Assembly: GCF_963921235.1 (NCBI RefSeq)
Contig: NC_086124.1
Span: 23,932,001 to 23,996,000 of the forward strand
From: Mobula hypostoma
Lineage: Eukaryota
Reading direction: 5' to 3'
DNA: 64,000 nt
The translations under genes and the position numbers were made by a program. The notes beneath the pieces are model-generated. The model saw only the letters and a program-made list of their open reading frames with translations. It searched no databases and had not been told where the DNA came from. Positions 9,487 to 62,674 of the stretch are shown one piece after another; position 1 is the stretch's first letter, and each line of letters begins with the position of its first letter.

Positions 9487-11547
9487 TCAGGCGCTGTGAA
9501 GCATTGTGCGAACCACTACGCTACGTTTAATCGGTGGACTTAGTTTCCCATTAGCTGGTCTCACTAGGTGAGAGAATGGAGATTTCAACACCTCCCTCAT
9601 CTGCTCCCTGAACTTCTTCTGGGTCAAGGCGTAAAGAGCCGTGTTTGTGCAGCAGCTCAGTAGCTGCAGCATGTAGCCCAGCTCCCTCATGGTCGAAGGT
9701 GGGTACAATGCAAAATTCAGATATGATAAACGAAAATAATATGATCGTATCCACACAGTGTGCACAACAAAAACCACCCACAACACGATGAAATTCGCCG
9801 ACACGACCAATAGTAAAATGAGCGACTTCCTCCGGCTTTGCATCTCCGGGTCTTTGGAGCTATCCCTATTGCTGTGATTCCGGAGTCTCCTCCGAGATCT
9901 GCTCGCCACTACCACGTGTCTGATGGTCAAAGCATTGAGCAGCAGAATGACCACAAACGGGATCACAGGCGTCAGAAAGAAGCTGCAAGACTCGACTATT
10001 GTCCAGGCAACTGAGAACAGAACACCGTCTCTTCCGTGGCAAAACCAAGGGACGTTATTAAACTGGTAGCGTCCTGAGAGCAAAAAATACCAGAAAATGT
10101 TCTTCAAACAGCTCAGGGCGGCCACAGTCCACAGAACAACAGCCGCAGTTCTCTCGGTGCAGTATTTAGCTTTCAGATTCTGGTAGCGAATAGCCACAAA
10201 TCGGTCGAAGGTGAACATGACGGTGAACCAGACGGAGCAGTCGTTAGCTGTGTAACGTAGGACGGCGTGGATATTACACACGGGGATGTTCGTCAGGAAC
10301 ATAAACGCTTCCCAAAAAACAATAGGAATCTGCCTCAATACCAGGTCGAAGACAACAACGAGAAGATCCGCCATTGCCATGGCCATCAAGTAACGAGCGA
10401 CGCCTTGCGAAAGACCGCACTTTCCCTGGGACAGGACCACAATCGTCAGCACGTTCACTATTGGGATTGAAAGAAACACAAGCATGTTTGTGGGCAAGGA
10501 ACAATGTCAGCACTGTCACAGACAGGAAATATGGAAACATGTTTTTGAAGCCAGAATGGAAGACTGCAGTTTTCCAGCATCAGCGATGTCTGCTGGTGAC
10601 GAGGATTATAGCTCAGTGAAGTCGACAAAGAACTGGAAAATAACGTCACCACGCCAAACAACGAACAGCTGAGAAGATGTGCCCTCGGATTTCGGTGAAG
10701 ATGAATTTGAAATAGGGCTCGAAATTGGTCATTGAATTGGAATTGCTTTACTGTTACGGAAGTGGAATAACAAGGGTACAGGGAAACACGCGTCTCCACA
10801 ATGTGCATACAGATCAATTCTTTACTCAGTGCTTTGAGGCGTGACGTAATATCATTTCAGGCTCTCCGGCTTCTTCTGCTGGTCTTTTAAATTTATACAA
10901 TATTTCGGAAGCCATCCATTTTAAACTGCAGTCCAAATAGGGAGTTCGGTATCTAAAGCTGCAAGGGACGCTTACTCAGTTGAGAATTTTAAACGCCAGC
11001 TCAGAAGATCTTTATTTAACTGGATTTTAACTGGAATTATTTTTCTGCTCTTTTCATGTTATTTCTGTTTGTATTATAAAAGCACATTAAAACTTCGTCT
11101 ATTTGTAAAGTGCTCTAATTATTATTATTATTATTATTTTTATTTTTGCTGTTTTTGTTGTTGTGATCGTTGTTGTTTAAAGAAAAAAAACGGGGAGATA
11201 AATGTTATTGACCGAATATGTCAATGTATTACAGGTTCATCATCAAAATTTCAGTTAGTGAGGAGATGGACTGCGTTAACCGGAAAATGTCATTAAATTC
11301 CTAAATATCAACTTTCTTTAAAGGAACCCGTGATCACTGCTTCTCCTTCTCTTGTCAGCAACTTACCGGGAAATGCAACCATAGCGAGAACGGGATAGTA
11401 GATGGGCTGAATTGTCCGAAGTAAATACCAGATCCGTATGTCTGCTGGTATCCAAGCGTCATTCGAAAAAATATAGGGAGCCAGGCTGAAGACACCCTTT
11501 CCCGTCCCAGGAACATTCCATGGTCCTATATCTAGTTCCTGAACCAT
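9487..11547 (-). CDS. Two-exon class A (rhodopsin-like) orphan GPCR, GPR139/GPR142-like, 383 aa, copy 1 (exon 1 11547-11367, exon 2 10457-9487)
   Basis: ATG at 11547. Exon 1 ends ..IYYPVLAMVAFP G|gtaagt and the acceptor is tttctttcaatcccaatag|TG AAC, giving an in-frame phase-1 join across a 909-nt intron. Seven hydrophobic helices with MAMADLL (TM2), PVC, TFDRFVAI (TM3), WFC (ECL2), SANFIVLW (TM6) and CTNTALY (TM7). Family assignment is from motif recall, not a search. Confidence 0.92.
11118..11177. repeat. Compound (ATT)n/(GTT)n microsatellite in the GPCR intron
   Basis: Length-variable paralogues at ~36030-36072 and ~47896-47968. Confidence 0.85.
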
Positions 11548-11743
11548 TGCCCGTCACTATTGCCAGATTCCAGTCGGTGACCGGCGATTCGCACGCTGCA
11601 CATGTGACCGTTCACGTAAAATTCCGCTTTGATGTTATCAGTTCCCCAAAAATTATTGTCTTCCCCTGTCGAGCCACTGCGGTCCGTGTGTGACGGAGGG
11701 GTTGCTCTCGCTAACACTATGAACCTTAATCGAAAGGAGCAAT

Positions 11744-11751
11744 TTTAAATA
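11744..11751 (-). promoter_or_regulatory. TATA-like TATTTAAA about 200 nt upstream of the GPCR ATG
   Basis: Kept in all three copies (36610-36617, 48504-48511). Motif only, no TSS data. Confidence 0.35.
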
Positions 11752-12799
11752 GAGCTGCTAATCCCCCAGTGACAGAACCAGGCTCCATACGGGCTGACGT
11801 TAATTACTCAACATACATCTACGGTTAACCCCTTTGAATCCGGATCGCTGGTGCAAAAGGTAAAACGAATTATTAAACAGGGTGGTGATGTCCGGAATAT
11901 ATGTCCACCGGTCCCGGACATTCGTTCTGCATCATCTAGCAGGAGACAGAATAGCTTGCAAGCACGTACCATCAGGCTCAGTAACAGCTTCAATCACCAC
12001 ATTATTAAAATATTCAACCCTTCCCCCTGACGATCAGATGGACTCTTGATATTGCAATCTGCCTCGCTCTGACTTTGCAATTTGTTGTTCCCCTGCGCCA
12101 CACTTTCTCTGTAACTGTAGCACTTTATTCTGCATTCTGTCATTGTATCACCCGGAAATCAATGCACTGAGGCAATCATTCTTCTCTTTTTTTTTTTTGA
12201 ATGAGGAGTATGTAAAACAAGGTTGTTTTCTTTTCCCAGCATCGGCAAATACAATGAAGGCCCGTGTAACATCAGTGTCCCATCGGGCAGGATGCTGCGC
12301 AGCGTCCTCACCAGGACCAGCAGTATCTAAAACAGTTACTTTCTCCAGGCAGTAACTGATCGACACTTATACCGACCAACACATTCCACCATCTCCCCCT
12401 CTGACCCAACACCACTACTTTATTATTTCCTATCAGTAAACATGTAAACAGCCCTTAGAATCACTTTGTAGACATATCAATCTCTGAATATAAACTATTT
12501 ATGCATTTATATTTATTGTCCTTTTTATTACTGTGCTCTTTGCCCTATTGTGTTTTTTGGCGCTGCAATGGATCCGGAGTAACAACTGTTTCGTTCTCCT
12601 TTGCGCTTGTGTAATGGAAATAATATTGAACAATTTTGAATCTTGAATAATAGACCCATTTACTAATTGAACACTCTGCAGTGTGATGGATCAATCGGTT
12701 AGGGAGCGGCCTGCAGGTTCTGATGAAAGACTCAGAGGGGATCCTTTCTTAAGACGGGAGGAGGGTGATGGAAACCTTGCAACTTTGCTCCAGTTAATC

Positions 12800-12807
12800 T
12801 GACGTCA
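12800..12807. promoter_or_regulatory. Full palindromic CRE (TGACGTCA) about 1.25 kb upstream of GPCR copy 1
   Basis: Also at 37660-37667; changed to TGAAGTCA at 49471-49478. Confidence 0.3.
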
Positions 12808-13457
12808 CTGCGTCGGCGATGAAGGAGTGGATCATGTTGTATCGGGTGAGTGACAATTCGGAAATTATGCGGTCGAAATTGCTTTATTTATGAAAGGGAT
12901 TTGGACCAAATCTGTATTAAAGTTCAACATATAATAAATCCCGTTTAAACGCCCATCTACTGGATTGAAAGAATGACAGCAAACACAGACTGTTGGAGGA
13001 GCTCGGCAGGTCAGGCAGCCTATATGGAAGTGAATAAACAGTTTCCGTTCGAGACCATTCATCAGGACCGAAGAGGAAGGAGGCACACGCCAGAGTGAAA
13101 TGGTGGGGAAGGCGATAAGGAATACAGATTGGTGCGTGATATTTGTGGCCAAGTGAGCGGGTAAATGGGAGGGTGGGGAAGAGGGATGAAGTGGAGACGT
13201 TGTAGTTGATAGTTGGAACAAATAAGGCAAGAGAAGAAGGAATCTGATAAGAGAGGGGAATAGACCATGGGGGAAATTGAAGGAAGTAGTCACAAGGGGG
13301 AGGTGATCTGCTTGTGAGGGAATGAAGGAAGAGTGGTGTCAGAATGGATATTTGAAGAAAAGGGAAGGGGAGCGGAGAAAATTATCGGAAAACATTAATA
13401 CATTGACATTTTTCTTTTTTGCACCTACCATATCAAAAATACTTCCAGGATTAAACC

Positions 13458-13584
13458 TGACGAAGGGTCTCGGCCTGAAACGTCGACTGCGCCTCTTCCT
13501 ATAGATGCTGCTTGGCCTGCTGCGTTCACCAGCAACTTTGATGTATGTTGCTTGAATTTCCAGCATCTGCAGAATTCCTGTTGT
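13458..13584 (+). mobile_element. Unit-A-specific Penelope-like-element-derived short insertion with hammerhead core
   Basis: Flanked by a 15-bp TSD ttccaggattaaacc (13443-13457 and 13585-13599). The site is empty in B1 (~38270) and B2 (~50120). Begins CTGACGA-agggtctcggcct-GAAAC-GTC. Confidence 0.75.
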
Positions 13585-14127
13585 TTCCAGGATTAAACCG
13601 TTTGGTACATCTGATGTGTTGCGTTCGGATCACATCGCAGGAAAATATAAGCTAGCCTGCCAATATTTCGTCATAACCTGCAAGCCAACAGATTGCCCAG
13701 AGATTCTCCTCCGCACTGCTTTCAATCATTCTGTACGTTGGTGACCAGAATTACCCACAGTACTCTAAAAGCGGGCAACGTAATGCTATGCACATGAGAG
13801 TGGTGTTGATTAAAGGAACCGCTTTGACTGAATAGTGGAGAAGTCTTGTTGGGCAGAATAGCTGCATTATGATGCTATAATTTGTAGGTTCAATACCTCA
13901 CCCTGGGTCCCTCTCACTTTCCAGTTTTACCCTTTATACTCACAGGTACGCCCTGTCCTTCGCCTGTTGATCACTCTGTTAACACTCTCTCACTGGCTGT
14001 CTCTTCTTTCCGTTCGACTGCTGCTAGTTCTCGACGAAATGTCTGGATATTATCCCTGCTCTAGTTTATGGCCACAACACTGTGAACCTTTGTCGCTATT
14101 CGCGCCTGTGATTCCTTTTCTCACAAC

Positions 14128-14197
14128 TCTCCACCCTCTCTATCCTTACCCTCTCTCCTTATCCCTGTCTCTCACTCTCTCTCTCTCTCTCTCTCTC
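14128..14197. repeat. CT-rich tract ending in (CT)n
   Basis: Directly visible. Paralogue at ~50665-50727. Confidence 0.85.
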
Positions 14198-14674
14198 GCT
14201 GTGCTCCAGACCCCTTTACTGCGTTGGCATCCATTGTGCGCACACCAGACAGCAGTACAAATGGGGTTCTATGTTGAGGGATGGGTGTTTACAGCGGCGG
14301 TGTGGAGAGGATCGTGTACACGCCGGACTCTAGTGCACTAGGGGCAGTTTTCGGATGTGTCTGTACAGACCGGGCTAGTTAACGATGAAATTTTTTTGAC
14401 ACACCTGCCAATGGAAAACATACTTCCGTGATTAATCCCGTCTGTACATTTCATCAACGGATGTATTTCCTTCGGGTCACCTTGCACGGAAATTACGATC
14501 AACCTGTCCAATAGAGAGAGTCGTGGAGTAATAGAAAAGTACAGCACAGAAAAAGACACTTCGGCCAATCTAGTCTGAGCCGAACCAATTAAACTTCTAC
14601 TCCCCCGACCTACACGCGTATCACAGCCCTCCCTAACCCAGGCATCCGTTTATGTATCCAAGCGTCTCTCAGAT

Positions 14675-15850
14675 TAGAGGTCCCCAACCACCGGGCCGCA
14701 AAGCACGTGCTACAGGGCCGCGAGAAAACCTTTCCTCATTCCCTGTCACGTACTGTTGAGCCATTACGCATGCGAGGTCATTAACCGCGCTTCATCCATG
14801 TCAGCGCGGGAAGGAGATCAATTCCCCGAGCTTGCAAATGACGGCAGGCTGAATAGTATGTTTGACATAACATCTCAGCCGACATTCTGGATCAAAGTCA
14901 AGGCTAAATAACCTGAGATAGCCACGAAAGCACTGAAAACGCTGCTTCCATTTCCAAAATTCTCTGCGAAGCGGGTTTTTCTGTAATGAATGCAACGAAA
15001 ACTAAATTGCCGAATAGACTGGACTTAAGGAACCACCTTCGGGTATCGCTGTCTCCCATCACCCCTCGACAGGACCGTCTCCTTGCAGGGAAACAAGTCC
15101 AAGGCTCCCACTGTTTCAGCGATATCGGTGTGTTGCAATGATTCGATATATTCATACGGGGAAAGTATGGGTTGTGTGTTTAATATCCAAACGTTACTTA
15201 AAATGTCATGATGCTATTGACTTATATAAGCATATAACACTTACAGCACAGAAACAAATCACCTCTGCCCTTCTAGTCCGTGCCGAACGCTTACTCTCAC
15301 CTAGTCCCAACGACCAGCACTCAGCCCACAACCTTCTATTCTTTTCCTGTCCATATATCTATCCATTTTTTCTTTAAATGATAATATCGAACCTGCCTCT
15401 ACCACTTCTACTGGAAGTTCGTTCAACACTTACTTCAAGCTCCCCTGTACTCCTCTGATAATTGATTTAACACTATATTCATGCGAGGAAAATATGCACT
15501 GTGTGTTTAATATTAAATTCGCCAGATAAACCCTTTTAGAAAGGAAATTGAGTGTATTAGGCCCTTATTACCGATATTCCGGACGTGGTTCTCCCGCACC
15601 GCCGAACAGAATCGCCAAAAGCAATTTGTCGGGGATAAAAAATCGTCACGTAAACGCATTCGCACTGGTGCCCGCGCAAGGCTTCATTGTCATTGAAGTC
15701 TTTTTCGGGTAAACCCAACGTATTTGTCTGCTACTCCTGTCCGTTGGCAATCCTACCCACCACCACCACCCCCGCCCCCTGGTCGGCCGGTCCGCAAGAA
15801 TATTGTTAATATTAAACCGGTCCGCAGTGCAAAAAGTTTGGGGACCCCTG
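14675..15850 (+). mobile_element. Non-autonomous hAT (Buster/Charlie-type) element E1
   Basis: Ends (c/t)agaggtcccc..ggggacccctg. Contains a transposase C-terminal remnant (ELANDG..YPEIATKALKTLLPF..) and an internal CR1 3' fragment. Confidence 0.75.
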
Positions 15851-16557
15851 ATCGATTGCAGTGCTTTGCTGTTTGAAAGAAGATTCCAGGAAGTGAGTAC
15901 AAGCTCGAACGGCCTTAAAGTGAAACAGTTTAGAGGTGGTTCGCCAACCAATGATAGACTCCATTTCGCCGATTAAAGCATCGAGGAAGATTGAAATCAA
16001 GGCGAGTGCAGAAACTGAGTGAGGGTTTAAAACTGACTGCTGTTTGATCGCAGGGACGGATCTCTCTGTTGTCAGATGAGTTGTGTAGTACCTTTCACTC
16101 ACTGTTGCCGGATGGTAGGCCTCTGTGTTTTAGTGGTTTCTCTATCTCTATCTCTCGACGTTGGTCAGAGGATATTACCGGGGCTCTGCATTTATGGACT
16201 GGACTATGGAGTTGTTCAATCTTATGATGTTTATACTCTGTCTTTTCGTCAGTTATTTCTCGTTATTTTGTGGCGTGTTTTGTTAGTTCTTTGTGTGAGC
16301 GAAAGGAGTTTGGGGTTTGATGTTCTTGTTCTTGATAGCTTTTTTGTGTGGTGTAGGTGTTGATGTTTATCTTTCAAATCTTTTCATGCATTTCTTTATA
16401 ATGTGGCTATCTGGAGAAAACAAATCTCAGAGTTGCATACTGAGTACATAATTTAATAATAAATGAACCTTTGAACGATTGTTGATGCCTGACGGGGCGA
16501 TTTGGGTATCTCAGAGAATGTTGAACTCATGGGATTATCAGGCACGAGTCTCCAGAG

Positions 16558-17752
16558 CAGGGGTCTGCAATCTTTTTTTGCACTACGGACCGGTTTAATA
16601 TTGACAATAATCTTGCGGACCGGCCGACCGGGGCGGGGGACGGGTAGGGTTGCCAACGGACAAGAGTAGCAGTCAAGTACGTTGTGTTCACCCCGAGAAA
16701 GATTTCAATGGCCATGAAGCCTTGTGCGGGCACCAGTGCGCATGTATCTACGTGCAGATGTTTTTTTTCCCTACAAATTCTTTTTGGCGATTCTGATCGG
16801 GGGATTGGGGGTTTGTTAACCACGACCGAAATATCGGTAATAACAGCCTAATACACACAACTTTCCTTCTAAAAGGGTTAATCTAACGAACTTAATATTA
16901 AATACACAGGGCATATTTTCCTCACATGAATATAGTGATAAGTCAATTATCAGGGGAAGACAGGGGAGCGTGAAGTAAGTGTTGAACGAAATTCCAGTAG
17001 AAGTGGTAGAGGCAGGTTCGATATTATCATTTAAAGAAAAATTGGATGGGTGTATGGGTAGGAAAGGAATTGCGGGTTGTGGGCTGAGTGCAGATCGGTG
17101 GGACTAGGTGAGAGTAGCGTTCAGAGCGGGCTAGAAGGGCAGAAATGGCCTGTTTCCGTGCTGTAATTGTTATATGGTTACATAAGTCAATAGCATCATA
17201 ACATTTTAAGTAACGTTTGGATATTAAACACACAGCACATATTTTCCCCGTATAAACATATAAAATCATTGCAACACACCGATATCGCTGAATCAGTGGG
17301 AGCCTTGGACTTGTTTCCCTGCAAGGAGACTGTCCTGTCATAGGGTGATGGGAGACAGCGATGCTCGAAGGGGGTTCCTTATGTCCAGTCTATTCCGCAA
17401 TTTGGTTTTCGTTGCATTCATTGCAGAAAAGCCGGCTTCGCAAGAGATATTTTGGAAAAGGAAGAAGTGTTTTCAGTGCTTTCGTTCCTATCTCAGGATA
17501 TTTAGCCTTGGCTTTGATCCAGAATGCCGGCAGAGATGTTATGTCAAACAGACTTTTTAGCCCGCCGTCTATTGCAAGCTTGGGGAGTTAATCTCCTTCC
17601 CGCGATGACATGGACGATGCACAGTTAATGACCTCGCATGCGTAATTGCTCAACAGTGCGTGACAGGGAATGAGGAAAGGTTTCCTCGCGGCCCGGTAGC
17701 ACATGCTTTGCGGCCAGGTACCGGTCCGCGGCCCGGTGGTTGGGGACCACTG
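16558..17752 (-). mobile_element. Non-autonomous Buster/Charlie-type element E2, inverted relative to E1
   Basis: Ends caggggtc..ggggaccactg. Reverse complement of E1 along its length. Confidence 0.75.
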
Positions 17753-18007
17753 GCCAAAATAAAATTCTAGTGAGCGGAGGGAAATCTGCACGTAAACGCA
17801 TGTGCACTGCTGCGCGCGCAAGGCTTCATGGATATTGAAGTCTTTCTCGAGGTAAACACAACATAGTTGACTACTATTCTTCTCCGTTGGCAACCCTACT
17901 CCCCACAACCACCCGCCCCGCCCCCCCCCCCATCCGCCCACAGCGGTCGGCAAGAATATTGTCAATATTAAACCGGTCCACAGTGCAAAAAAAATTGGGG
18001 ACCCCTG
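17753..18007 (+). mobile_element. Isolated 3'-terminal fragment of the same Buster-type family
   Basis: Matches the last ~250 nt of E1 and ends ggggacccctg. Confidence 0.7.
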
Positions 18008-18009
18008 CA

Positions 18010-19555
18010 TTAATCCTTACTCTTTTTTTCCTCTCTGCCAACCAATTTTCTATCCCTGTCAGTACCCTACCCCCAACGCCATTTACTCTAATTTTGCACA
18101 ATTACCTCTATGTGGCTTTCTGAAAGTCCAGGTACAGTACATCCTCTGGCTTTCCCATGTCCATTTTTATAGTTACATTCTCAAAAAAAGTCCAGAAGAT
18201 TAGTCAAGCATCATTTCCCTTTCGTAAATCCATGCTGACTCGTACCTATCCTGCCACTGCTATCCAAACATTCCGCTATTACATCTTTTATAATTAATTC
18301 CATTATCTTCTCCACCACTGATGTCAGACTAACTGGTCTATAATTGTCTGTTTTCTCTCTCCCTCCTTTCTTAAAAAGTGGGATAACATTAGCTACCCTC
18401 CAATCCGTAGGAACTGATCGTGAATCTATAGAACAATGGAAAATAATTACAAATGCGTCCAATGTAAAATTAAGTTACAATGTAAATTGAAAAGCGTAAA
18501 TACAGGACTGAAGGTGTCATATCTGAAAGCATGCAGTACACTGGAATAAGGTCAATGAACTTGTAGCACAGTTAGAGATCGGCAGGTATGATGTTGTAAG
18601 CATCACGGAATCATGGCTGAAAGAAGATTATAGCTGGGAGATTAATGTCCAACGGTACACATCGTATCGAAAGGACAGGCAGGAAGCCAGAGGAGCCAGT
18701 ATTCTTCTGTTAGTAAAAGTGTAATTTAATTATTAGAAATGGTTGACATACGTTCGGCAGGTGTTGAATCATTGTGGATAGAGCTTAGAAACTGCAAGGG
18801 GTATAAAGAACCTGAAACGGGGTATACAAAATGCGTTCCAAAAGGGGAACCTTACAATAGTCATGGGGGATTTCAATATGTAAGCAGATTGGGTTGCTGT
18901 GGGATTCCAAGGGGGAAATTCCAGAATGCCTATGGGATGGTGTTTCAGAGCTGCTCGTGTTGAGCCACGAAAGGAGAATCTATTGATGTTGTGTACTTAG
19001 GTTTTCAGAAGGCCATTGACAAGGTGCCACACGTGAGGCTGCTTGGTAAGCTACGTGCTCATGGTATTACAGGAAAGATTCTCGCATGGATAAAGCACTG
19101 GCTGACTGGCAGGAGGCAAAGACTAGGAATAAAGGGGGCTTTTCTGGTGGCTGCCGGTGACTACTGGTGTTCCATGGGGTCTGTGTTATGACCGATTCTT
19201 CTTACATTATATGTTAATGATTTGGATGATGGATTTCATGGTTTTGTTGCAACATTGCAGACGATACGCAGATAGGTGGAGTGGCAGATAGTTTTGCAGA
19301 AATAGAGAGGCTACAGAAGTACTTAGACAGATTAGGAGAATGGACAAAGAAGTGGCAGGTGGAATACAGTGTCGGGAAGTACTTGGTCATATACTTCGAT
19401 AGAAGATGTGAAAGGGTTGACTCTTTTCTAAGTGGAGAGAAAATACAAAATCTGAGGCACAAGGGGACTTGGGAGTCCTTCTGCAGGATTCTCTGAAGCT
19501 CAATTTTCAGGTGGAGTCTGTGGTGAGGAAGTCAAATGCAATATTAGAATTAAAT
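18010..19555. mobile_element. Divergent CR1 ORF2 fragments (- 18010-18465 pre-RT region, + 18480-19555 endonuclease/RT with deletions)
   Basis: DWRVANVIPLFKKGGREKTDNYRPVSLTS on -; YLGFQKAIDKVPH on +. Confidence 0.85.
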
Positions 19556-19561
19556 GCAATA

Positions 19562-22280: not shown

Positions 22281-22289
22281 AAAAATCCT

Positions 22290-23330
22290 TTCCCTGGGCC
22301 TTTGCACTCAGATCTGCAGCTGGATTTTCAACTTCCTCACAGACAGAACCCAGGCTGTAAAAATTGAGGACAAGCTCTCCTCTACAATCACTCTGAGCAC
22401 CGGTGCCCCACAAGGCTGTGTACTCAGCACCCTGCTGTACTCACTGCACACCCATGATTGTGTAGCCAAGTTTCCATCAAACTCAATAGATAAGTTTGCT
22501 GATGACACAACAATTGTTGGTCGTATCTCGGGTAATGATGAGTTTCAATACAGAGAGGAAATTAAGAACCTGGTGGCATGGTGCGAAGACAATAACCTAT
22601 CCCTCAACGGCAGCAAGACGAAAGAATTAGTTGTTGAATTCGGAAGGAGTAGCGGACTGCACTGCCCAATTTCCGTCGGTGGTGCGCAAGTGGAACAGGT
22701 CAAAAGCTTTAAGTTCCTCGGGGTCAATATCACAAATACCCTGACTTGGTCCAACCAAGCAGAGTTCACTGCCAAGAAGGCCCACCAGCGCCTTTACTTC
22801 CTGAGAAAACTAAAGAAATGTCGTCTGTCTCCTAAAACCCTCACTAATTTTTATAGATGCACCGTAGAAAGCATTCTTCTAGGGTACATCACAGCCTGGT
22901 ACGGAAGTTGTCCTGTCCAAGACCGAAAGAAGCTGCAGAAGGTCGTGAACACGCCGCAGCGCATCACACAAACCAATCTTCCATCCTTGGACTCACTTTA
23001 CCCCGCACGCTGTCGGAGCAGTGCTGCCAGGGTAACAGAAGACACGACCCACCCAGCCAACATACTTTTTTCGTCCCTCTTCCTTCCGGGAGAAGGCTCA
23101 GGAGCTTGAAGACTCCTACGGCCAGATTTGGGAACAGCTTCTTTCCAACTGTGATGAGACTGCTGAACAGATCCTGACCCGGATCTGGGCCGGACCCTCC
23201 AAATATCCGGACCTGCTTCTCGGTTTTTTTGCACTGCCTTACTTCCCATTTTTCTATTTTCTATTTATGATTTATAATTTATTTTTTTTTTAATATTTAC
23301 TCATTTTAACTATTTTTGCTATATTAAATA
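22290..23330 (+). mobile_element. Rex1/Babar-type LINE 3' portion (RT domain to tail)
   Basis: Open frame [33 protein letters not shown]. The unit B copy (~61310-61555) has lost ~0.8 kb. Confidence 0.8.
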
Positions 23331-23593
23331 TTTAATATTTGTGATCCAGGGAGTGTGAAGCGCAGAATCAAATATCGCTGTGATGATTTTACGTTCTAGT
23401 ACCAATTGTTTGGTGACAATAAAGTGTAAAGTATAAGTATGAGCAAAAGTGTAAGTATAGGAGGGGAGTCCAGGACAAGAGAGCACAGCCTTATAATAGA
23501 AAGATGTCCATTTAAAAAAGAGATGAGGTGGAATTTCTTTAGCCGGAGGCTGGTGAATCTGCAGAATTTGTTGAGTTCTGTTCATTTGGGCTA

Positions 23594-23776
23594 TGTAATT
23601 ATTTAAGACGCATGCGCACTCTCCCAGTTATACGCATGCACGCGGAAGGAGGAAGAGGAACTGTGGGATGTAAAGCTGGCGGCCTTGGGTACTGAACAGA
23701 GGCATACAAAGTAAAGTGGTTTAAACAAAAGGAAAATGTGTCTTTGCTGTTTGGCCGTTATCAGTGGTAGCGGTGG
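23594..23776 (+). mobile_element. Possible 170-nt LTR (TG..CA) followed by a PBS-like TGGTAGCGG
   Basis: tgtaattatt..cgttatca then gtggtagcggtgg. Paralogue at 61815-61997. No second LTR or gag seen. Confidence 0.3.
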
Positions 23777-24452: not shown

Positions 24453-24649
24453 CTGTGAAGGAATTGGAGAAGAGTGTATGGGTTCATAGTAGCTTAGCTC
24501 TCTTGTGACTGGACGGTAGGCACAGAACTTCATCCTGTGTCTGAACCCGCGAGTATGTGATAGCATAGTGTAGAGGGGGCCTCACTCTGTGTCTGACCCG
24601 AGAAGTGGTAGATTGTGAGATCAATAGCCCATCTTATCATACGACAGAA

Positions 24650-29764: not shown

Positions 29765-29795
<31 letters not shown>

Positions 29796-42146: not shown

Positions 42147-42195
<49 letters not shown>

Positions 42196-53427: not shown

Positions 53428-53429
53428 CA

Positions 53430-56165
53430 GTCATCCCTACTCTTTTTTCCCTCTCTACCAACCAATTTTCTATCCCTGTCCGTACCCTACCCTTAATACC
53501 ATTTACTCTAATTTTGCACGCTAACCTCTATGTGGCTTTCTGAAAGTCCAGGTACAGTACATCCACTGGCTTTCCCATGTCGATTTTTATAGTTACATTC
53601 TCAAAAAAAATCCAGAAGATTAGTTAAACATCATTTCCCTTACGTAAATCCCTGCTGACTCGGACCTATCCTGCCACTGCTATCCAAATACTCCGCTATT
53701 ACATCTTTTATAATTAATTCCAGTATTTTCCCCACCACTGATGTCAGACTAATTGGTCTATAATTGTCTGTTTTCTCTCTCCCTCCTTTCTTAAAAAGTG
53801 GGATAACATTAGCTACCCTCCAATCCATAGGAACTGATCCTGAATCTATAGAACATTGGAAAATAATTACCAATGCGTCCAATGTAAAATTAAGTTACAA
53901 TCTAAATTGAAAAGCGTGAATACAGGACTGAAGGTGTCATATCTGAAAGCATGCAGTACACTAGAATAAGGTCGATGAACTTGTAGCACAGTTAGAGATC
54001 GGCAGGTATGATGTTGTAAGCATCACGGAATCATGGCTGAAAGAAGATTATAGCTGGGAGATTAATGTCCAACGGTACACATCGTATCGAAAGGACAGGC
54101 AGGAAGCCAGAGGAGCCAGTTTTCTTCTGTTGGTTAAAAATGTAATTTAATCATTAGAAATGGTTGACATAGGGTCGGCAGGTGTTGAATCATTGTGGAT
54201 AGAGCTTAGAAACTGCAAGGGCTATAAAGAGCCTGATAGGAGTTATATATAGAAATCCCCAAAAGGATCAAACGGGGTACAGAAAATGCATGTCAAAAAG
54301 GTAACCTTACAATAGTCATGGGGGATTTCAATATGCAGGTAGATTGGGTTGCTGTGGTATTCCAAGGGGGAAATTCCAGAATGCCTATGGGATGGTTTTT
54401 CAGAGCTGCTCGTGGTTGAGCCCTCTGGGGGATCAGCTATTCTGGATTGGGTGTTGTGCAATGAACTGGAATTGATTAGCGAGCTTAAGGTAAAGGGCCC
54501 TTGAGGGCAAGTGATCTTAATATGATCGACTTCACCCTGAATTCTGAGAGGGAGAAGCTAGGATGACATAACCATGGCAAACAAGGGCAGTCAGAGCCAA
54601 CATAAAAGCCAAAGAGAGGGCATAAAATAGAGGAAAACTTAGAGGATTGGGAAGTTTTTTGAAACCAGCAGAAGGCAACTAAAATGTTATTGAGGTAAAG
54701 ATAGAAGACTGGAAAATTACAAATGACTCTCCAGTCTTCAACAGGGGAGAGAGAAGAAGAAAGAAAATTATCGAACAATATGCCTGTCCTCAATAGTTGG
54801 GAAGACGTGGGAGTCGATTGTTAAGAATGTGGTTTCAGGGTACAAGGAGGCACATGATAAAACAGGCCATAGTCATCATGGTTCCCTCTGAGGAAAATCT
54901 TGCCTGACAAATCTACTAGAATTCTTTGAGGAAATAACGAGCAAAATAGACAAAGGAGAATCTATTGATGTTGTGTACTTGGGTTTTCAGAAGACCATTG
55001 ACAAGGTGCCACACGTGAGGCTGCTTGGTAAGCTACGAGCTCATGGTATCACAGGAAAGAATCTAGCATGGATAATGCAGTGGCTGACTGGCAGGAGGCA
55101 AAGACTAGGAATGAAGGGGGCTTTTCTGGTGGCTGCCGGTGACTACTGGTGTTCCACGGGGTCTGTGTTAGGACCGATTCTTCTTACAGTATATGTTAAT
55201 GATTTGGAGGATGGATTTAATGGTTTTGTGGCAACATTGCAGACGATACGCAGATAGGTGGAGGAGCAGATAGTTTTGCAGAAATAGAGAGGCTACAGAA
55301 GTACTTAGACAGATTAGGAGAATGGACAAAGAAGTGGCAGCTGGAATACAGTATCGGGAATTGTTTGGTCATATACTTCGATAGAAGAGGTTAAAGGGTT
55401 GACTGTTTTCTAAGTGGAGAGAAAATACAAAATCTGAGGCACAAGGGGACTTGGGAGTCCTTGTGCAGGATTCTCTGAAGCTCAATTTGCAGGCTAAGTC
55501 TGTGGTGAGAAAGTCAAATGCAATAGTAGAATTAAAACCAAGAGGACTAGAATATAAAAGCAAGGATGTAATAGTGAGACTTTATAAGGCACTGGTAAGG
55601 CTTCACTTTGAGTATTGCGAGCAGCTTTGTACCCGTTATCTTAGAAAGGATGTGCTGAAATTGGAGAAGGTTCAAAGAGGGTTCACGAAAATGATTCCAG
55701 AAATAAACATCTTATCATATGGAGAGTGTGTGATGGTATTAGGCTTGTATTCACTGAAATTCAGCATAATGAGGGGTGACATCATTGAAACCTATCAAAT
55801 GGTGAAAGGCTTTGATAGGGTGGATGTGGAGAGAATGAGCCCTATGGTGTGAAAGTCTAAGACAAGAGGGCATAGCCTCAGAATAGAGGGGCATCCTTTT
55901 AGGACATAGTTAAGGATGAATTTCGTTTGCCAGTTTGCGGTGAATCGGTGGATTTCGTTGCCACAGGCGGCTGCGGAGGCCAAGTCTTTATATATATTTT
56001 AAGGCAAAGGTTGAAAATTTCTTGATTGGTCAGGGCATGAAGGGATATGGGGAGAAGGCAGGAGATTGGGACTGAGAGGAAAAATACATCAGTCATGATA
56101 AAATGGCAGGGCAGACTCAACGGGTCAAATGGCCTAATTGTGCTCCTATATTTAGTGGTTTTGTC
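53430..56165. mobile_element. Unit B divergent CR1 fragments (- 53430-53880, + 53900-56165, more complete than in A)
   Basis: Same motifs. The + fragment continues through RLYKALVRLHFEYC into the 3' UTR. Confidence 0.85.
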
Positions 56166-56529
56166 GTCAATGATTTGCAGAAGCGATGATGAACTCGAAC
56201 TGTACCATCGGCTTCAGAGGACGATGGAGACAGACGTTTATCGATGGCCTATGCCCAAGTGAGTATGTAAGGTGAGTGAGTAAGGGTGTCAAAGGTGACA
56301 GGGAGAAAGTAGGAAAATTGAGTTGATGGGGGCATGAAATCAACCATGATGGGGTGATGGAGCAGGCTCGATGGGCTGAATAGCCTAAACCTGCTCTTCG
56401 GTCTTATTCTCACTGAGCAAAAACAGCTTCGTCCCTTCCTTCAGTTTTTTTGGAACCCAACCTTGTTATTCTATTTGTTTCAGTTATTTTGAACATTTAT
56501 AGCAATCTTTTTATGTCTTTCCCCGACCT

Positions 56530-56558
56530 TCACGTCACAGAGGTCAGTGATGATAAAT
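56530..56558 (-). pseudogene. Candidate short cytoplasmic-tail exon of the IgSF gene
   Basis: After a 79-nt intron, acceptor tattctcaaatcag| gives (D)LSSLTSVT-TGA in phase. Short, so it could be chance. Confidence 0.4.
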
Positions 56559-56637
56559 CTGATTTGAGAATAGTGCAGAGACGGTTTCCCAGTTTAATCC
56601 ACATTGATGAAGCTCTGTAAGCCTCTCAGCCACTTAC

Positions 56638-56751
56638 CCCTCGACGTGCAGCAGTACAAGATTCCAGTCACCACCATTGCGCACAGCCCGAGTATCCCCA
56701 GGACAGCTCCAACAATGATCAAAGCTTCATTCTCAACCAGTGCGTTGTGTT
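56638..56751 (-). pseudogene. Transmembrane exon of the IgSF gene (unit B only)
   Basis: 114 nt, phase 1-1, with donor G|gtaagt and acceptor ttttctcctgag| (non-optimal GAG). Encodes (E)HNALVENEALIIVGAVLGILGLCAMVVTGILYCCTSR, in frame with the C1 exon. Confidence 0.75.
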
Positions 56752-57029
56752 CTCAGGAGAAAACGTTGGAGGTTCTGTCGTTGTGCTAAGTCATGTTTCA
56801 TATCATATCATTAAGTTCAAAGCTAATTTATTATCAGAGTACTTACGTATATGTCAACCTATGCAACTCTGAGGTTCAATTTCCTGTGGGCATACTCGGC
56901 AAATCTATAGAGTAGTAACTAGAACGGGGTCAATGAACGATCAACTTGACTGCAGAAGACAACAAACTGTGCCACTGTGCTGTGCAATAAATAAATAGCA
57001 TCAAATAACCAGAAACTGAGATAAAGAGT

Positions 57030-57430
57030 CCTTAAAGAGAGATCATTGGTTGTAGGAGCATCTTAATGGATGGACAAGTGAGTGTAATCAAGACCCAGAT
57101 GGCTGAGGGGTGGTAACTGATTCTGAACCTGGCGGTGTGAGTCCCGAAGCTCCTGTACCTTCCACCTGATTGCAGCAGCGAGAGAAGTGCATGGCCTGGG
57201 TGGTGGGGATCTCTGACAAAGAATACTGCTTTGCTACAACGTTGTTTCATGTAGATGTCATCAATGGTTGGGAGGGCTTCACCCGTGATGTACTGGACCA
57301 AATCCACTATCTTTTGTAGGATTTTCCATTCAAAGGCATTGGTGTTTCCATACCAGTCTGTAATGCAGCCAGTCAATTCACATCCAGAAAAGTTTGCCAA
57401 AGTTTCAGTGTCCGGTCAAATCTCCAGTGA
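57030..57430 (-). mobile_element. Rex1/Babar-type LINE 3' fragment (unit B only)
   Basis: LTGCITDWYGN..DPHHPGHALLSLLQSGGRYRS. Confidence 0.75.
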
Positions 57431-57647
57431 CTCCTAAGGAAGTAGGGACAAGTCTACTTCCTTAAGAGGTGACTTGTTGTGAGCAGCTCCCATGGGAATC
57501 ATCAAATATTCCCATTGTTCAGGACTACAACAGCTGAAATGCGTGGTCACGGCTATGGTTACTTCAGTAAATAACACATTTCACTACGTATCCCAAAGAT
57601 ATTAAACCTGATTCTGTTTTGTAAAGGCATGTTCAATGTACGAGGAG

Positions 57648-60600
57648 CAGCGGCAGCGCTAAGGTGGTGCTAGCTGGGGCTATAGCACCAGCAGAAATTG
57701 CAATAGCTCCACCATAGCACCACCAAGAAATTAACTGCAGCTGCTTTGCTTTCTCTGTATAGTTTTTAAAACAGCCTGTTTCCCCAGTTGATCTACTGAA
57801 ATAGCACCCCCAATTACCGTAGCAACCACGCAGCAATACAGTTACAAACTCTCTCAGATCCACTCTACACTTCTGCTTATTCGTTCGTTGTCAATGTCTT
57901 GCTGTTGCGTTCCTCAGATCAGTTTAGCTGATCAAAGGCCACCTAAGCTTGTGATGTCACTCACTCTCACTCACGCGAGAGATTGATAGTATACATCCAG
58001 GCGCAGATCCGTGGTCTCGCGAGACTAACGGATGCCACACGCGCGCACTGTGCTTTTACAAGCGAGCGTGGGCCTGGCACGTGCATTATTTTGGCCGGCG
58101 TGAAATATTGATCGATTTTTAATCAGGAAACGACCTCATCCAGAGGAATCAGTGGTGTCTCTGCCTGAACATGTCTTAATTGAAAGTGACATGCAGAAAG
58201 AAGTAAGTGGGGATGAGGACGACAGCAGTTCATCGAGGAGTGCGAGGGCGAAGTAGAGGAACATGAAATGGAGCGGGATTCGGAAGAGAACGTGGATGAA
58301 GCTGCTCTTAGTGCGAGTGGAAATACTGTTAGCGATGATAGCCAGCAGCCTGAGGAAGGACCCCGGCGGCCAGCATTGAAAAAGTACCCTTCGCAACAGT
58401 TTGGCAAACACAAAGGAGTATTCATAGCTGGTTTGACGTATATTCCTTGCTGGAATATTCAATCACAAAATATGCTACATTCTGCTTCGCATGCAGACAT
58501 TTCCTCTGTGGAGGACCTGGGTTCTATTCTGAGACTACCTTCACTGTCACCGATTACCGCAACTGGCGGAAAGCTACAACAGCTTTCAAAACCCACCACC
58601 TAAGTACAGCTCATAAGTTGGCTATGGAGGCATGGGGCGAATTCAGATTGAGAAAACAAGACGGTTCAAGATTGGGAAATATGCTTGATAAAAGACATGC
58701 AAACATTGTCCAAGGAAGTCGTGAGTATATGTGAGCAGTGGTTGAGTCTCTACGCTATACTACGTGCCAAGGCATTGCCCGGCGAGGATACCGGCAGAAT
58801 GGTGGATCTGGCAATAGGGGAAACTTTGTTGAGTTGCTCAGTGTAATTGGGAAGTTTGATAAGACAGTAGCTAAAAAGAAGAATAGAGGACAATCCTGGA
58901 AATGCAAAAAACCCCCATCACCATATCCAAACTGAAATTATGATTATTATGGCAGATATGGTCGAACGTCAAATAAGTGCAGAAATCCAGGAGGCTGGAT
59001 ATTTTGCCAGCATGATGGATGAAAGTAAGGACTTGAGTAAAAAGGAGCAAGTATCAGTGGTGGTGCGGTATCTGAATAAAGAAACAGTGCTTGAAGAATT
59101 CTTGCACTTCTCTCCAGCAGAAGGGTTGGACGCAGAGTCGCTTCTTAAAAGCATTGAACAGACGCTCGCCCAGTGTGTTATTGATAAGAACGCGTGTATA
59201 GGTCAGTGTTATGACGGGGCGGCAGTGATGTCCGGGTGCAATAACGGGGTATAAGAGAGGCATTATATATACACTGCCATGCTCACAGACTTAACCTTGT
59301 TTTAGTGGATGTTGTGAGCAATGTACCAGAAGCGGGTGAGTTTTTTTTAAACTGTGCAGCTGCTTTACAACTTCTTTTCAAACTCTGTTGCCCACAGTCT
59401 TTTCATGAAGAAACAGAGAGAAGTGGACTCAACTGCACAGCCCGTGGAGTTGAAGAAATTGCCAGATACACACTGGGCATGGCGGTATACAGCTTTGTAC
59501 ACCATAAGGAAATCACTGTCTGCCATTCTAGTTACACTACATGATATTATGGTTCAACCAAATGCACGGAGGCAAACGGAGGCCAGAGCTCTAAATGGAC
59601 TGATTGACGCGCAGTTTGCTTTACTTCTCACTCTGTTTGAGGATTTACTCCGAGTCACTAAGTTCATGTCAGACCAGCTACAATCTCCCAGTTTGGAGCT
59701 TTCATCCGCTGTGGACTTGGCTCAGTCTGTTTTCGATGCACTCTCAGCAAAACGGGGAGAGGAATCATGAAGTGAAATTCAGACAAGAGCTAGGGATCTG
59801 TGCGTCAAGGCCGGTGTACAGAGCAGAGCACATGAAAGGAGACGGGCCCAGCCACCCCGCCGCCTACATCATTTTGTTGTTGAGGCCCAAACTGAACGCA
59901 TACCTGTCAAATCCTACGATGACCTTCGCAGCCACAGATTCTATCCAGTTATAGACAGACTTCTGACTGAAATGGAAAGACGGTTCTCAATTGAGACTGG
60001 GGGTGTTCTGACTGGAGTCTTGGCATTGACTCCGAAACATAAGTTCTTCCTCGACAAGAATTGTCTTTGGCCAATGTCCCAATACTATGGAGTGACTGAA
60101 GTGAACCTGACTGCAAAGCTACATCAGGTTCGGCTTCTGCTGGAAACAAAACAAAAGGAAGGACAGACAATGATTGACACAGTGGAATTTCTGGCTCTAA
60201 TGAGACCCGACACGATGCATTTATAGATTTATAGAAATTAATCTGCATATCACTGACTCTGCCTGTTACATCTGCCTCATGCGAACGGAGTTTCTTTTGC
60301 CTCAGACGCGTCGAAAACTACTTAAGGAACAGCAGCGGCGATGCTCGGAACAGCAAGTTGGCTCTGTTGGCAAAAAACAGCCGGAGGACCAAAGCACTTG
60401 ACATCCAGAAAATCATTGATCCTTTCGCCACCAATCACAACAACAGACGGATTTTGCTTGTCTGAAAATATTAATGGTGAGTGCAGTTGATTTTTTCAAA
60501 ATCTGGGCCAGGACTAATGCTGATTATTATTATTATTATTTTGACGTGGATACCCCGTAGTCCTTATCTTTCCTGCAGATCCTAAAATATTACATTCACT

Positions 60601-61188
60601 GCTATTAAGCCTATTTGTTTTGCCTGGATCTCCAAACGGTGATTCTGTTGATTTTTGTTTTAAATTCAGTAGCCGAACTAATTGAGGTATTGCATGGTCA
60701 GACTACGATTTGTCCAACGCCTAGTAAAGTCTTGCATCTGTTATTTGCCTTGTTTGACTTTAATAACGGTGTATCGTTTGGCATTGCTGTCTATGTAATG
60801 CGATTAGCAGTGGGTTAGTTTTGTGTTTTTCAGTTGAAAAGCACGCATTAGACGCTGATTGCGGGATTGGTGCGTGATTCACGTTGTCCGCTGTTGCTCG
60901 GATACTGTTTGTTTTTTTTCTTTGTTTGTGCTCCGTGTAGCCCAGGTTGTCCTCGATGCCGTGTGACAGTGTAACAGTTCACTTCTATATTAGATCTATC
61001 AATTGCTTTTGCTTGTGAATCAATAGAGGCATTTACCGTAAGCACATTATGCTTGAAACTGACTTCTTGACGCCACGCGTCTGGCCTTGCGAATACATAT
61101 TACCAGACAGGGCATCCCTCAGCACCATTACTGAATCATTCAGCCCCTCCGAAGCACCAGCAAGAAAAATTCTCTTGCGCCGTCACTG
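57648..61188 (+). mobile_element. hAT DNA transposon with both ends, ZMYM1-like/DUF4371-type transposase pseudogene
   Basis: Imperfect TIRs cagcggcagcgc / cagtgacggcgc (9/12), 8-bp TSD acgaggag / acgaggcg and subterminal agcacc repeats. Motifs FCFACRHF, DESKD, CYDGAAVMSG, HCHAHRLNL and CERSF are split by stops and frameshifts (~58450-60465). Confidence 0.88.
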
Positions 61189-62404
61189 ACGAGGCGCATT
61201 TGATGGGTCTGGACCTGTACTCACTGGAGATTTGAAGAATGAAGGGAGATGCTATGAAATATTAGAAGTCCTGGATAGAGTGGACAAAGAGAGGATGTTT
61301 CCTATACCTGGGCCTTAGCACTCAGATCTGCAGCTGGATCTTCAACTTCCTCACAGACAGAACCCAGGCTGTAAAAATAGAGGACAAGCTCTCCTCTGCA
61401 ATCACTCTGAGCACCGGTGCCCCACAAGGCTGTGTATTCAGCACCCTGCTGTACTCACTGTACACCCATGATTGTGTAGCCAATTTTCCATCAAACTCAA
61501 TAGATAAGTTTGCTGATGACACAAGAATTGTAGGCCGTAGCTCGGGTAATAATGAATATTTGTGATCCAGGGAGTGTGAAGCGCAGAATCAAATATCGCT
61601 GTGATGATTTTACGCTCTAGTACCAATTGTTTGGCGACAATAAAGTATAAAGTATAAGTATAAGCATAAGTGTAAGTATAGGAGGGGAGTCCAGGACAAG
61701 AGAGCACAGCCTTGTAATAGAAAGATATCCATTTAAAACAGAGATGAGGAGGAATTTCTTGAGCCAGAGGTTGGTGAATCTGCAGAATTTGTTGAGTTCT
61801 GTTCATTTGGGATGTGTAATTATTTAAGACGCATACGCACTCTCCCAGTTATACGCGTGCACGCGGAAGGAGGAAGAGGAACTGTGGGAGGTAAATGTGG
61901 CGGCCTTGGGTATTGAACGGAGGCATACAAAGTAAAGTGGTTTAAACAAAAGGAAAATGTGTCTTTGCTGTTTGGCCGTTATCAGTGGTAGCGGTGGACG
62001 TTTACCATCTATCGACCTCTGGGATATGGGCCCTGCGCACTACTGAGTATGTTTGAAGCAGAGATCGATAGGTTCTTGATTGGAAAGAACATCAAAGGTT
62101 ACGGGGAGAAGTCAGGAGACTGGGCTTCAGCGAGACAATGAATCTGTCACGATGGAATCCCAGAGTAGACTTGATGAGCCAAATGGCCCAATTCTGCTCT
62201 TAGGGCTTATGGTTTTATGGTATCTAAGCTGTCTGACTTGATTCTCACAATTGACAGCAGAGAGGATGAGAGAGGTCTTGAGCAGTTGGAACTTGCTTCT
62301 GGACAGAAACGGGCCACGATGGATTCTGTGTCAAGTTGACATCAGTGAGAATACGGTGCTGTTGAAGGGGTCAGGCGACATTTCTCCAACTTGCCCGTTG
62401 TTAC

Positions 62405-62674
62405 CTAGAGGTATCATGAGCTTCCCACTGACAGCCTCGTGTTCCATCTGACAGACGTACCCCTGGCTGTCTCCATCCAGGGGACGGACACTCCTAACTT
62501 GAAAGGTTCCATTGCTTTGAGGGACAACGTTGGTCGTGTCTGATCCATTGTCAGCTACTTCCCCGTTTCTGAACCAGTGCACTTTAATGTCCCGGGGGAA
62601 GAAGTTCTTGGTCGTGCACACCAGATATATTTAACCCCGTTTCTTCTGTGTCAAGGCTCTGGTGTGGGTAGGAG
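62405..62674 (-). pseudogene. Ig C1-set domain exon, unit B copy, in-frame stop
   Basis: 270 nt, phase 1-1. Encodes PTHTRALTQKKRG*IYLVCTTKNFFPRDIKVHWFRNGE..NGTFQ..YVCQMEH, with two Cys 55 aa apart and Trp at Cys+14. TAA at 62633-62631 (GAA in unit A). Confidence 0.88.

What the first reader, a model, noticed from the sequence alone, without database searches (positions are those of the whole stretch)
9487..62674. Co-amplified cassette pairing an orphan GPR139-like GPCR with an MHC/SIRP-like Ig membrane-protein gene
Seen: each repeat unit carries, on the same strand, GPCR gene(s) and IgSF exons (3 GPCR copies and 2 Ig C1 exons in the window), and the pattern continues into unit C. Established: receptor arrays in vertebrates evolve by birth-and-death, and C1-set domains are largely confined to adaptive-immunity-related proteins (MHC, Ig/TCR, tapasin, SIRP, B7-H6). 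Inference: this may be an undescribed chondrichthyan cluster in which an orphan chemosensory or immune GPCR and a C1-type surface protein amplify together. The Ig partner could equally be a dead passenger, since both copies here are damaged.
Basis: partly seen in the sequence, partly recalled or inferred. Interest (0 to 1): 0.8.

Follow-up and report, generated by a model that had tools for sequence, protein, structure and literature searches.

The report
Receptor gene array carrying MHC relic
A roughly 25-kb stretch of a devil-ray chromosome has been copied head-to-tail several times; each copy carries an orphan receptor gene, and the long copies also carry a broken, headless leftover of a known "W-category" MHC beta-chain gene, so the two were copied together because they are neighbours, not because they work as a pair.

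Summary
The window is a tandem array with a period of 24,977 nt and copies 93-95% alike. It has three GPR139-like receptor copies and two C1-set Ig exons, all on the minus strand.

The proposed functional pairing is not supported.

**Ig gene.** It is not an undescribed MHC/SIRP-like gene. It is the 3' remnant (beta2 exon plus connecting-peptide/TM exon) of a W-category MHC beta chain of the WB_Nds5L lineage (Okamura 2021).
- No leader, beta1 or tail exon exists anywhere in the window.
- Copy C has a stop codon. Copy A lost the first Ig cysteine and the TM exon. Unit B lost the whole segment.
- RNA contigs carry a spliced beta2-TM message, but it comes from a paralogue about 8% different, matching the full-length WB model P0220.

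**Receptor.** Two copies have open frames and one is dead. All three lack the ancestral N-terminus.

**Linkage.** Four batoid WB loci (127 kb) hold no such receptor. Linkage is seen only at chromosome level in stingray relatives.

This scan had already noted the receptor family and intact WB genes elsewhere in this genome. The finding is ordinary segmental duplication.

The parts
1..25342 (.). Repeat unit A (full length, about 25 kb)
   Evidence: Self-alignment: 1-365 matches 24978-25342, and 496-11693 matches 25473-36588 at 94-95%.
25343..25472 (.). Assembly gap (130 N) at the A/B boundary
   Evidence: The flanks are collinear with unit A, and the predicted spacing is also 130 nt. The letters were not inferred.
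25473..38782 (.). Repeat unit B, truncated; it lacks the 11.7-kb part that holds the Ig exons
   Evidence: B ends at the equivalent of A 14090, and unit C begins at the equivalent of A 790.
38792..63326 (.). Repeat unit C (full length)
   Evidence: It aligns to unit A at 90.6-94.7%, piece by piece.
63684..64000 (.). Start of a further unit (D); the array runs on past the window
   Evidence: 63684-64000 matches 594-910 and 25571-25887 at 94-95%.
9487..10485 (-). GPR139-like receptor, copy A: open frame of 332 codons from the ATG
   Evidence: Pfam 7tm_1 E=3.5e-16. It is 95% identical to Mobula hypostoma P0001. The ancestral N-terminus lies out of frame.
34397..35395 (-). GPR139-like receptor, copy B: open frame of 332 codons
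   Evidence: Pfam 7tm_1 E=2.3e-16. It is 96.7% identical to copy A at the nucleotide level, with dN/dS 0.61, not significantly different from neutral.
46434..47261 (-). GPR139-like receptor, copy C: pseudogene
   Evidence: There is a 1-nt deletion after CDS nt 433 and a 170-nt deletion of CDS 621-790.
24183..24452 (-). WB beta2 (C1-set) exon, copy A: open, but the first Ig cysteine is replaced by Gly (codon at 24394-24396)
   Evidence: WB profile E=3e-39.
62405..62674 (-). WB beta2 (C1-set) exon, copy C: in-frame TAA at 62631-62633
   Evidence: Pfam C1-set E=3e-14. WB profile E=3.5e-40. It is 83% identical to Mobula WB P0220.
56638..56751 (-). WB connecting-peptide/TM exon (114 nt, phase 1-1), present in unit C only
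   Evidence: It has an AG acceptor and a GTAAGT donor. It is 92% identical to the Hypanus and Hemitrygon WB TM exons. RNA contigs of the paralogue splice exactly at 62405|56751.
19554..19562 (.). Site in unit A where the 2.45-kb segment holding the TM exon (C 55536-57986) is missing
   Evidence: 18970-19554 matches 54952-55536, and 19562-22038 matches 57986-60459.
19729..22089 (+). Decayed hAT transposon. In unit A it lies beyond the site of the lost TM segment. Its copy in unit C (57986-60459) lies inside the WB beta2-TM intron
   Evidence: Pfam DUF4371 and Dimer_Tnp_hAT hit separate broken frames.

Best explanation
This is a young tandem segmental duplication in a Mobula (devil ray) chromosome. 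The unit is about 25 kb and copies differ by 5-6%.

The unit contains one single-exon orphan class A receptor and the 3' stub of a neighbouring W-category MHC beta-chain gene. The receptor belongs to the very large shark-and-ray family that databases label "probable GPR139". The stub belongs to the WB_Nds5L lineage and keeps only the beta2 Ig exon and the connecting-peptide/TM exon.

Inferred steps: the stub entered the unit because a duplication breakpoint fell in the beta1-beta2 intron, and unequal crossing-over then multiplied the unit. Shown: the stub has no signal peptide, no ligand-binding domain and no tail, and it is decaying freely. It has a stop codon in C, has lost a cysteine and the TM exon in A, and is entirely absent from B.

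The receptor copies follow birth-and-death, with two open frames and one dead copy. Whether the open copies still work is not shown.

The GPCR-Ig pairing is hitch-hiking through physical linkage near a W-category MHC region. It is not a functional cassette.
For: **Array structure.** Period, boundaries and identities come from the self-alignments.

**Identity of the Ig gene.**
- An exhaustive HMMER search with the beta2 exon ranks class-II-shaped proteins highest or near the top (P0121, P0123, P0124, P0138).
- Public records name these inconsistently as class I or class II.
- P0124 is the paper's "cloudy catshark WB_Nds5L_159K". [quoted passage not shown]
- In a tree, the window fragments fall inside the stingray-order WB clade with support 100/99.

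**Truncation.**
- tblastn with six WB proteins, then with the three closest, found only beta2 (twice) and TM (once).
- A 15-protein WB profile run against all six-frame segments gave the same result.
- The same profile finds beta1 in skate loci at E=1e-36, a positive control.

**Damage.**

**RNA.** Contigs of 2.3 kb in 3 of 4 runs join beta2 to TM at the predicted exon ends. They differ from this copy at 21 of 255 nt and read LQIPL, as P0220 does.

**Receptor.**
- It belongs to a family with 2,131 hits.
- The window copies and P0001 form a tight clade with 100/100 support.
- Copy C is dead.

**No conserved adjacency.**
- There are no receptor-like sequences in four batoid WB loci totalling 127 kb.
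- No 7tm neighbour is annotated within 10 kb of WB in Mobula, Hypanus or Hemitrygon, and no C1-set neighbour within 10 kb of the receptors.
Against: - The nearest receptor relatives and a WB gene share one chromosome in Mobula hypostoma, Hypanus sabinus and Hemitrygon akajei, judged by equal contig lengths. Some linkage is therefore older than this array. Distances could not be measured, because no DNA was served for those genomes.
- Only plus or minus 10 kb around each gene could be inspected.
- RNA was available only as contigs from four runs of unknown tissue, so rare transcripts of the relic cannot be excluded.
- Units outside the window were not seen.
Confidence: 0.8

Rival explanations
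1. Functional co-amplified cassette: a receptor and a single-Ig C1-TM surface protein are kept together and amplified as a working pair.
For: - Both lie on the same strand in the same unit.
- Beta1-less WB models with open beta2-TM-tail frames exist in Pristis (P0121) and Mobula birostris (P0222).
- WB and the nearest receptors share a chromosome in three stingray-order species.
Against: - No unit in the window has both partners intact, and unit B keeps an open receptor with no Ig exon at all.
- The relic has no leader, beta1 or tail.
- No transcripts of this copy were seen.
- No receptor lies beside WB in four batoid loci.
Confidence: 0.04
2. The whole array is dead DNA, and the two open receptor frames are also decaying.
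For: - All three copies share a frameshift that cuts off the ancestral start. About 18 residues are lost, leaving only 10 residues before the conserved TM1 asparagine.
- dN/dS between A and B is 0.61, not distinguishable from neutral (p=0.22).
- The clade sits on a long stem branch of 0.32.
- Neither frame appears in the public protein collection.
- The related models are CDS-only, without UTRs.
Against: - Two frames of 999 nt stay open at 3.3% divergence, and a third copy in M. hypostoma (P0001) is open too.
- The conserved class A positions are kept (DRF, TM2 Asp, TM4 Trp, NTALY).
- Synonymous change exceeds non-synonymous change per site.
Confidence: 0.3
3. Assembly artefact: the tandem copies are collapsed or mis-joined haplotypes rather than true paralogues.
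For: - An assembly gap sits exactly at the A/B boundary.
- Single DNA runs hold only about 0.6 of the sampled words.
Against: - Copies differ by 5-6% and by large structural changes: an 11.7-kb deletion, a 2.45-kb indel and a 170-nt deletion. That is far more than allelic difference.
- Four units lie on one contig, three of them joined without a gap.
- A further 92-95% copy is annotated in M. hypostoma.
Confidence: 0.04

Closest known systems
W-category MHC beta chain, WB_Nds5L lineage (Okamura et al. 2021, PMC8713811)
   Same: The beta2 C1-set exon and the connecting-peptide/TM exon match in sequence, exon phase and TM glycine motif. The fragments fall in the stingray-order WB clade.
   Different: Only the 3' stub is present. 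There is no leader, beta1, tail or head-to-head WA partner, and the frames are broken. It is a relic, not a working gene.
Partial WB duplicate in Pristis pectinata (P0121, locus L001)
   Same: It is also a beta1-less WB copy lying near a full-length WB/WA pair.
   Different: The Pristis copy keeps open beta2, TM and tail frames and has no receptor neighbour. The window copies are broken and sit in a receptor array.
MHC-linked olfactory receptor clusters of mammals (e.g. PMC11800647), and OR genes inside the TCR-alpha locus (the latter from my own knowledge)
   Same: A fast-evolving single-exon class A receptor array lies physically linked to an MHC-type region.
   Different: Here the linked MHC element inside the array is a dead fragment. 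The receptor is not an OR, and no expression or haplotype data exist.
GPR139 / GPR142
   Same: Human GPR139 is the best solved-structure match. The TM1 motif and the proline-less TM7 motif are shared.
   Different: The match scores only 35.6 bits (E=6.7e-8). The window gene belongs to a shark-and-ray-only expansion of hundreds of genes and is not an orthologue.

Membership tests
MHC W-category beta chain (WB_Nds5L) | Membrane-proximal C1-set domain most similar to named WB proteins | tested here: met
   The highest-ranked single-domain hits are P0121, P0123, P0124 and P0138. P0124 equals the paper's cloudy catshark WB_Nds5L_159K. WB profile E=3.5e-40. Clade support is 100/99.
MHC W-category beta chain (WB_Nds5L) | Class-II-type exon layout: a phase-1 beta2 exon followed by a connecting-peptide/TM exon with a glycine-rich TM | tested here: met
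   The exons are 270 nt and 114 nt, both phase 1-1. The TM reads NEALIIVGAVLGILG, as in great white shark WB_Nds5L. The paralogue's RNA splices at the same ends.
MHC W-category beta chain (WB_Nds5L) | Leader and membrane-distal beta1 domain | tested here: not met
   None was found in the window by tblastn or by profile search. The same profile detects beta1 in skate loci.
MHC W-category beta chain (WB_Nds5L) | Open reading frame with the two Ig cysteines | tested here: not met
   Copy C has a TAA before the first cysteine, and copy A has Gly in place of it.
MHC W-category beta chain (WB_Nds5L) | Head-to-head WA partner gene | tested here: not met
   There is no further C1-set exon in the window. 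Skate, Pristis and Hemitrygon WB loci do have a C1-set gene head-to-head.
SIRP-like receptor | N-terminal V-set domain followed by C1 domains | tested here: not met
   No V-type exon was found by motif scan. The sequence relatives are WB chains, not SIRP.
Rhodopsin-class (class A) GPCR | Seven-TM profile match with conserved TM positions | tested here: met
   Pfam 7tm_1 at 60 bits against a cut-off of 30.5, covering profile positions 2-260. The N-terminal part of TM1 is shortened by a frameshift.
GPR139 (orthologue) | High similarity to vertebrate GPR139 | tested here: not met
   The match to human GPR139 scores only 35.6 bits (E=6.7e-8). Its nearest kin are shark and ray paralogues at 57-95% identity.
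Shark-and-ray 'probable GPR139' expansion | Clusters with the lineage-specific paralogues | tested here: met
   There are 2,131 hits at E<=1e-5, and the best are all elasmobranch. The window copies lie inside a stingray-order clade with 100/100 support.
Chemosensory receptor repertoire | Expression in sensory neurons, or a known ligand | not testable with these tools

The most novel reading that the evidence does not exclude
A lineage-specific orphan receptor array has settled and is amplifying inside or beside the W-category MHC region of stingray-order rays. This linkage would be kept for a reason (shared regulation, or MHC-related chemosensing), as has been argued for the MHC-linked olfactory receptors of mammals. 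Somewhere in the array a beta1-less C1-TM protein might still be made.
Probability: 0.05. Interest if true: 0.6.

Novelty: new member of a known kind. Interest (0 to 1): 0.22.

Why it matters
- **It removes a false lead.** The "MHC/SIRP-like" partner is a dead stub of a known gene kind, so no new receptor-ligand cassette should be inferred.
- **It documents W-category gene turnover.** WB_Nds5L genes in rays shed partial copies, which matters for counting W genes. Public records name them inconsistently as class I, class II, FcRn-like or zinc-alpha-2-glycoprotein-like.
- **It adds one more array of an unstudied receptor family.** I found no paper on the very large shark-and-ray receptor family. 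This copy lineage carries a shortened first helix.

Tried and rejected
- **Solved-structure sequence search with the beta2 exon.** It was dominated by antibody heavy chains and did not help assign the exon.
- **Weak tblastn matches to the WB tail.** These lie at 23524-23673 and 61745-61804 (E 0.18-0.98). They are Ser/Asn-rich low-complexity sequence, lie in the wrong order (between beta2 and TM), and were not recovered by the profile search. Rejected.
- **"YACEVIN" motif hits.** They belong to transposon frames, not Ig domains.
- **Locus comparison in Mobula, Hypanus and Hemitrygon.** Only gene lists within plus or minus 10 kb were served, without DNA or coordinates, so distances between WB and the receptors are unknown.
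- **Literature searches for the receptor expansion.** They found nothing relevant.
- **Selection tests on window copies.** The differences are too few to separate constraint from neutrality.
- **tRNA and tandem-repeat scans.** They added nothing.
- **Receptor expression.** Not tested, because the one read-laying run went to the Ig exons.
Full report
**Structure of the window.** Self-alignment shows a head-to-tail array. Window 1-365 matches 24978-25342, so the period is 24,977 nt.
- Unit A is 1-25342.
- Unit B is 25473-38782.
- Unit C is 38792-63326.
- A fourth unit starts at 63684.
- Copies are 93-95% identical.

Unit B is truncated. It ends at the equivalent of A 14090 and is joined, after 9 nt, to the equivalent of A 790. 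About 11.7 kb is therefore missing.

**The assembly gap.** The gap at 25343-25472 (130 N) lies at the A/B boundary. Its left flank aligns to 1-365 and its right flank aligns from 496 onward. The sides are collinear, and the spacing the period predicts equals the stated gap length. No receptor frame or Ig exon lies within 890 nt of it. I did not infer its letters.

**The receptor.** There are three copies on the minus strand.
- Copies A (9487-10485) and B (34397-35395) are open for 332 codons from the ATG. They match Pfam 7tm_1 at about 60 bits.
- Copy C (46434-47261) has a 1-nt deletion and a 170-nt deletion.

The family is very large. There are 2,131 hits at E<=1e-5, and the best are all from sharks and rays. 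These are labelled "probable GPR139" and are spread over dozens of contigs in Heterodontus and Heptranchias. The best hit is Mobula hypostoma P0001, at 95% identity to A and 92% to B. Human GPR139 is the nearest solved structure, but at only 35.6 bits. The label therefore marks a distant cousin, not an orthologue.

In a tree, A, B and P0001 form a tight clade with 100/100 support on a long stem. That clade lies inside a stingray-order clade with Hypanus and Hemitrygon genes.

Several caveats apply to whether the open copies work.
- All three window copies share a frameshift that puts the ancestral start in another frame. That start reads MFPYFLSV..., as in Hypanus. The frame now begins only 10 residues before the conserved TM1 asparagine.
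- dN/dS between A and B is 0.61, not separable from neutral.
- Neither frame is in the public protein collection.

**The Ig exons.** Two 270-nt, phase 1-1 C1-set exons lie on the minus strand at 24183-24452 (A) and 62405-62674 (C) (Pfam C1-set 3e-14).
- Copy C has a TAA at 62631-62633, five codons before the first Ig cysteine.
- Copy A is open but has Gly in place of that cysteine.
- A 114-nt connecting-peptide/TM exon lies at 56638-56751, with an AG acceptor and a GTAAGT donor, phase 1-1.
- This TM exon exists only in unit C. It sits in a 2.45-kb segment that unit A lacks at 19554-19562.

**What the Ig gene is.** An exhaustive HMMER search with the A exon ranks proteins of class II shape highest or near the top: P0121, P0123, P0124 and P0138. 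Public records name them inconsistently as class I or class II.

P0124 is the "cloudy catshark WB_Nds5L_159K" of Okamura et al. 2021. The great white shark WB_Nds5L carries the same TM motif, NEALIIVGAVLGILG, as the window (PMC8713811 supplement). Closer relatives are full-length WB models from several species:
- Mobula hypostoma, P0220
- Hemitrygon, P0221
- Hypanus, P0229
- Pristis, P0219

The window fragments sit in the stingray-order WB clade with 100/99 support. They form an unresolved three-way split with Hypanus WB and the Mobula working gene. The gene is therefore a W-category MHC beta chain, a known kind.

**It is only a stub.** tblastn with six WB proteins, and then with the three closest, found only beta2 (twice) and TM (once). 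A profile of 15 WB proteins against every six-frame segment of 20 residues or more gave the same answer. There is no leader, no beta1 and no tail. The same profile finds beta1 in skate loci at E about 1e-36, so the search works.

The beta2 copies differ from each other by 9%, more than the flanking DNA, with dN/dS 0.63.

**RNA.** In three of four RNA runs of the window's organism, a 2.3-kb contig joins beta2 to TM exactly at 62405|56751. This confirms the exon ends. The contig differs from copy C at 21 of 255 nt. Its last beta2 codons read LQIPL, as in P0220 and P0222, not LMIPL. Beta2 starts near nt 404 of that message, which fits a full-length WB with leader and beta1.

The expressed gene is therefore a paralogue elsewhere in the genome. 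No contig matching the window copies was seen. The other laid contigs fall outside the WB exons, over the intron and its transposon remains, and mostly match at under 95%.

**Is the adjacency conserved?**
- Four batoid WB loci with DNA hold WB, usually with a head-to-head C1-set partner, and no receptor-like sequence at E<=0.01. These are Pristis (two loci), Amblyraja and Leucoraja, 127 kb in all.
- In Mobula, Hypanus and Hemitrygon, no 7tm gene is annotated within 10 kb of WB, and no C1-set gene within 10 kb of the receptors.
- The nearest receptor relatives and a WB gene do share one chromosome in those three species, judged by equal contig lengths. In the sharks, none of the 120 listed receptors lies on the WB contig.
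- Linkage is thus at chromosome level, and was seen only in this ray order.

**Reading.** A duplication unit captured one receptor gene and the 3' part of a neighbouring WB gene. Unequal crossing-over then multiplied it. That the capture came from a breakpoint in the beta1-beta2 intron is inferred.

The stub could never make a protein on its own and is decaying in a different way in each unit. The receptor copies follow birth-and-death, and their function is unproven. Receptor retention is independent of the stub: unit B keeps an open receptor with no Ig exon, and unit C keeps the fullest stub beside a dead receptor.

**Earlier notes of this scan.** The scan had already flagged several arrays of this receptor family on other parts of this genome. 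It had also flagged intact WB genes 3.9-4.0 Mb away and W-like features 47 kb before and 62 kb beyond this window. I took the W-category lead and the TM-exon lead from those notes and tested both here. The off-window claims remain unchecked.

Noticed in passing
window 10484-10540, 35394-35450, 47260-47316 (minus strand): All three receptor copies share a frameshift relative to their Hypanus orthologues. The ancestral ATG and about 18 residues (MFPYFLSVTVLTLFLAHKH) are out of frame, so the open frame starts in mid-TM1. The Mobula hypostoma models P0001 and P0007 start at the same internal Met.
   Followed up: partly
L001 14737-21870 (Pristis pectinata): P0121 is a beta1-less WB copy with open beta2, TM and tail exons. 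No beta1 or leader lies in the 14.7 kb upstream, and there is no N gap. It lies about 30 kb from the full-length WB P0219 and its head-to-head partner. Partial WB copies seem to recur in batoids.
   Followed up: partly
window 19729-22089 and 57986-60459 (plus strand): A decayed hAT transposon (DUF4371 plus the hAT dimerisation domain, in several broken frames). In unit C it lies inside the WB beta2-TM intron.
   Followed up: partly
window 14690-15853 / 16555-17719, and 51221-51724 / 52677-53181: Inverted repeat pairs at about 87% identity. They carry a frame that looked to me like a hAT C-terminal region (YACEVIN...LKTLLPFP...). Pfam found nothing in the one long frame tested (52722-53465). 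Probably two copies of one transposon.
   Followed up: no
window 9487-10485 and 34397-35395: Neither open receptor frame is present in the 15-billion-protein public collection, so these copies appear unannotated. Related public models are CDS-only, without UTRs, which suggests no transcript support.
   Followed up: partly
P0229 (Hypanus sabinus), P0222 (Mobula birostris): Public WB models look flawed. P0229 reads through the TM exon donor into an odd tail, and P0222 lacks leader and beta1. Names range from "zinc-alpha-2-glycoprotein-like" to "FcRn large subunit-like".
   Followed up: no
window 4784-4870 and 42143-42195; 357-486: Short TCA microsatellites at the same unit position in A and C, and a CT-rich minisatellite near the start of the unit.
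   Followed up: no
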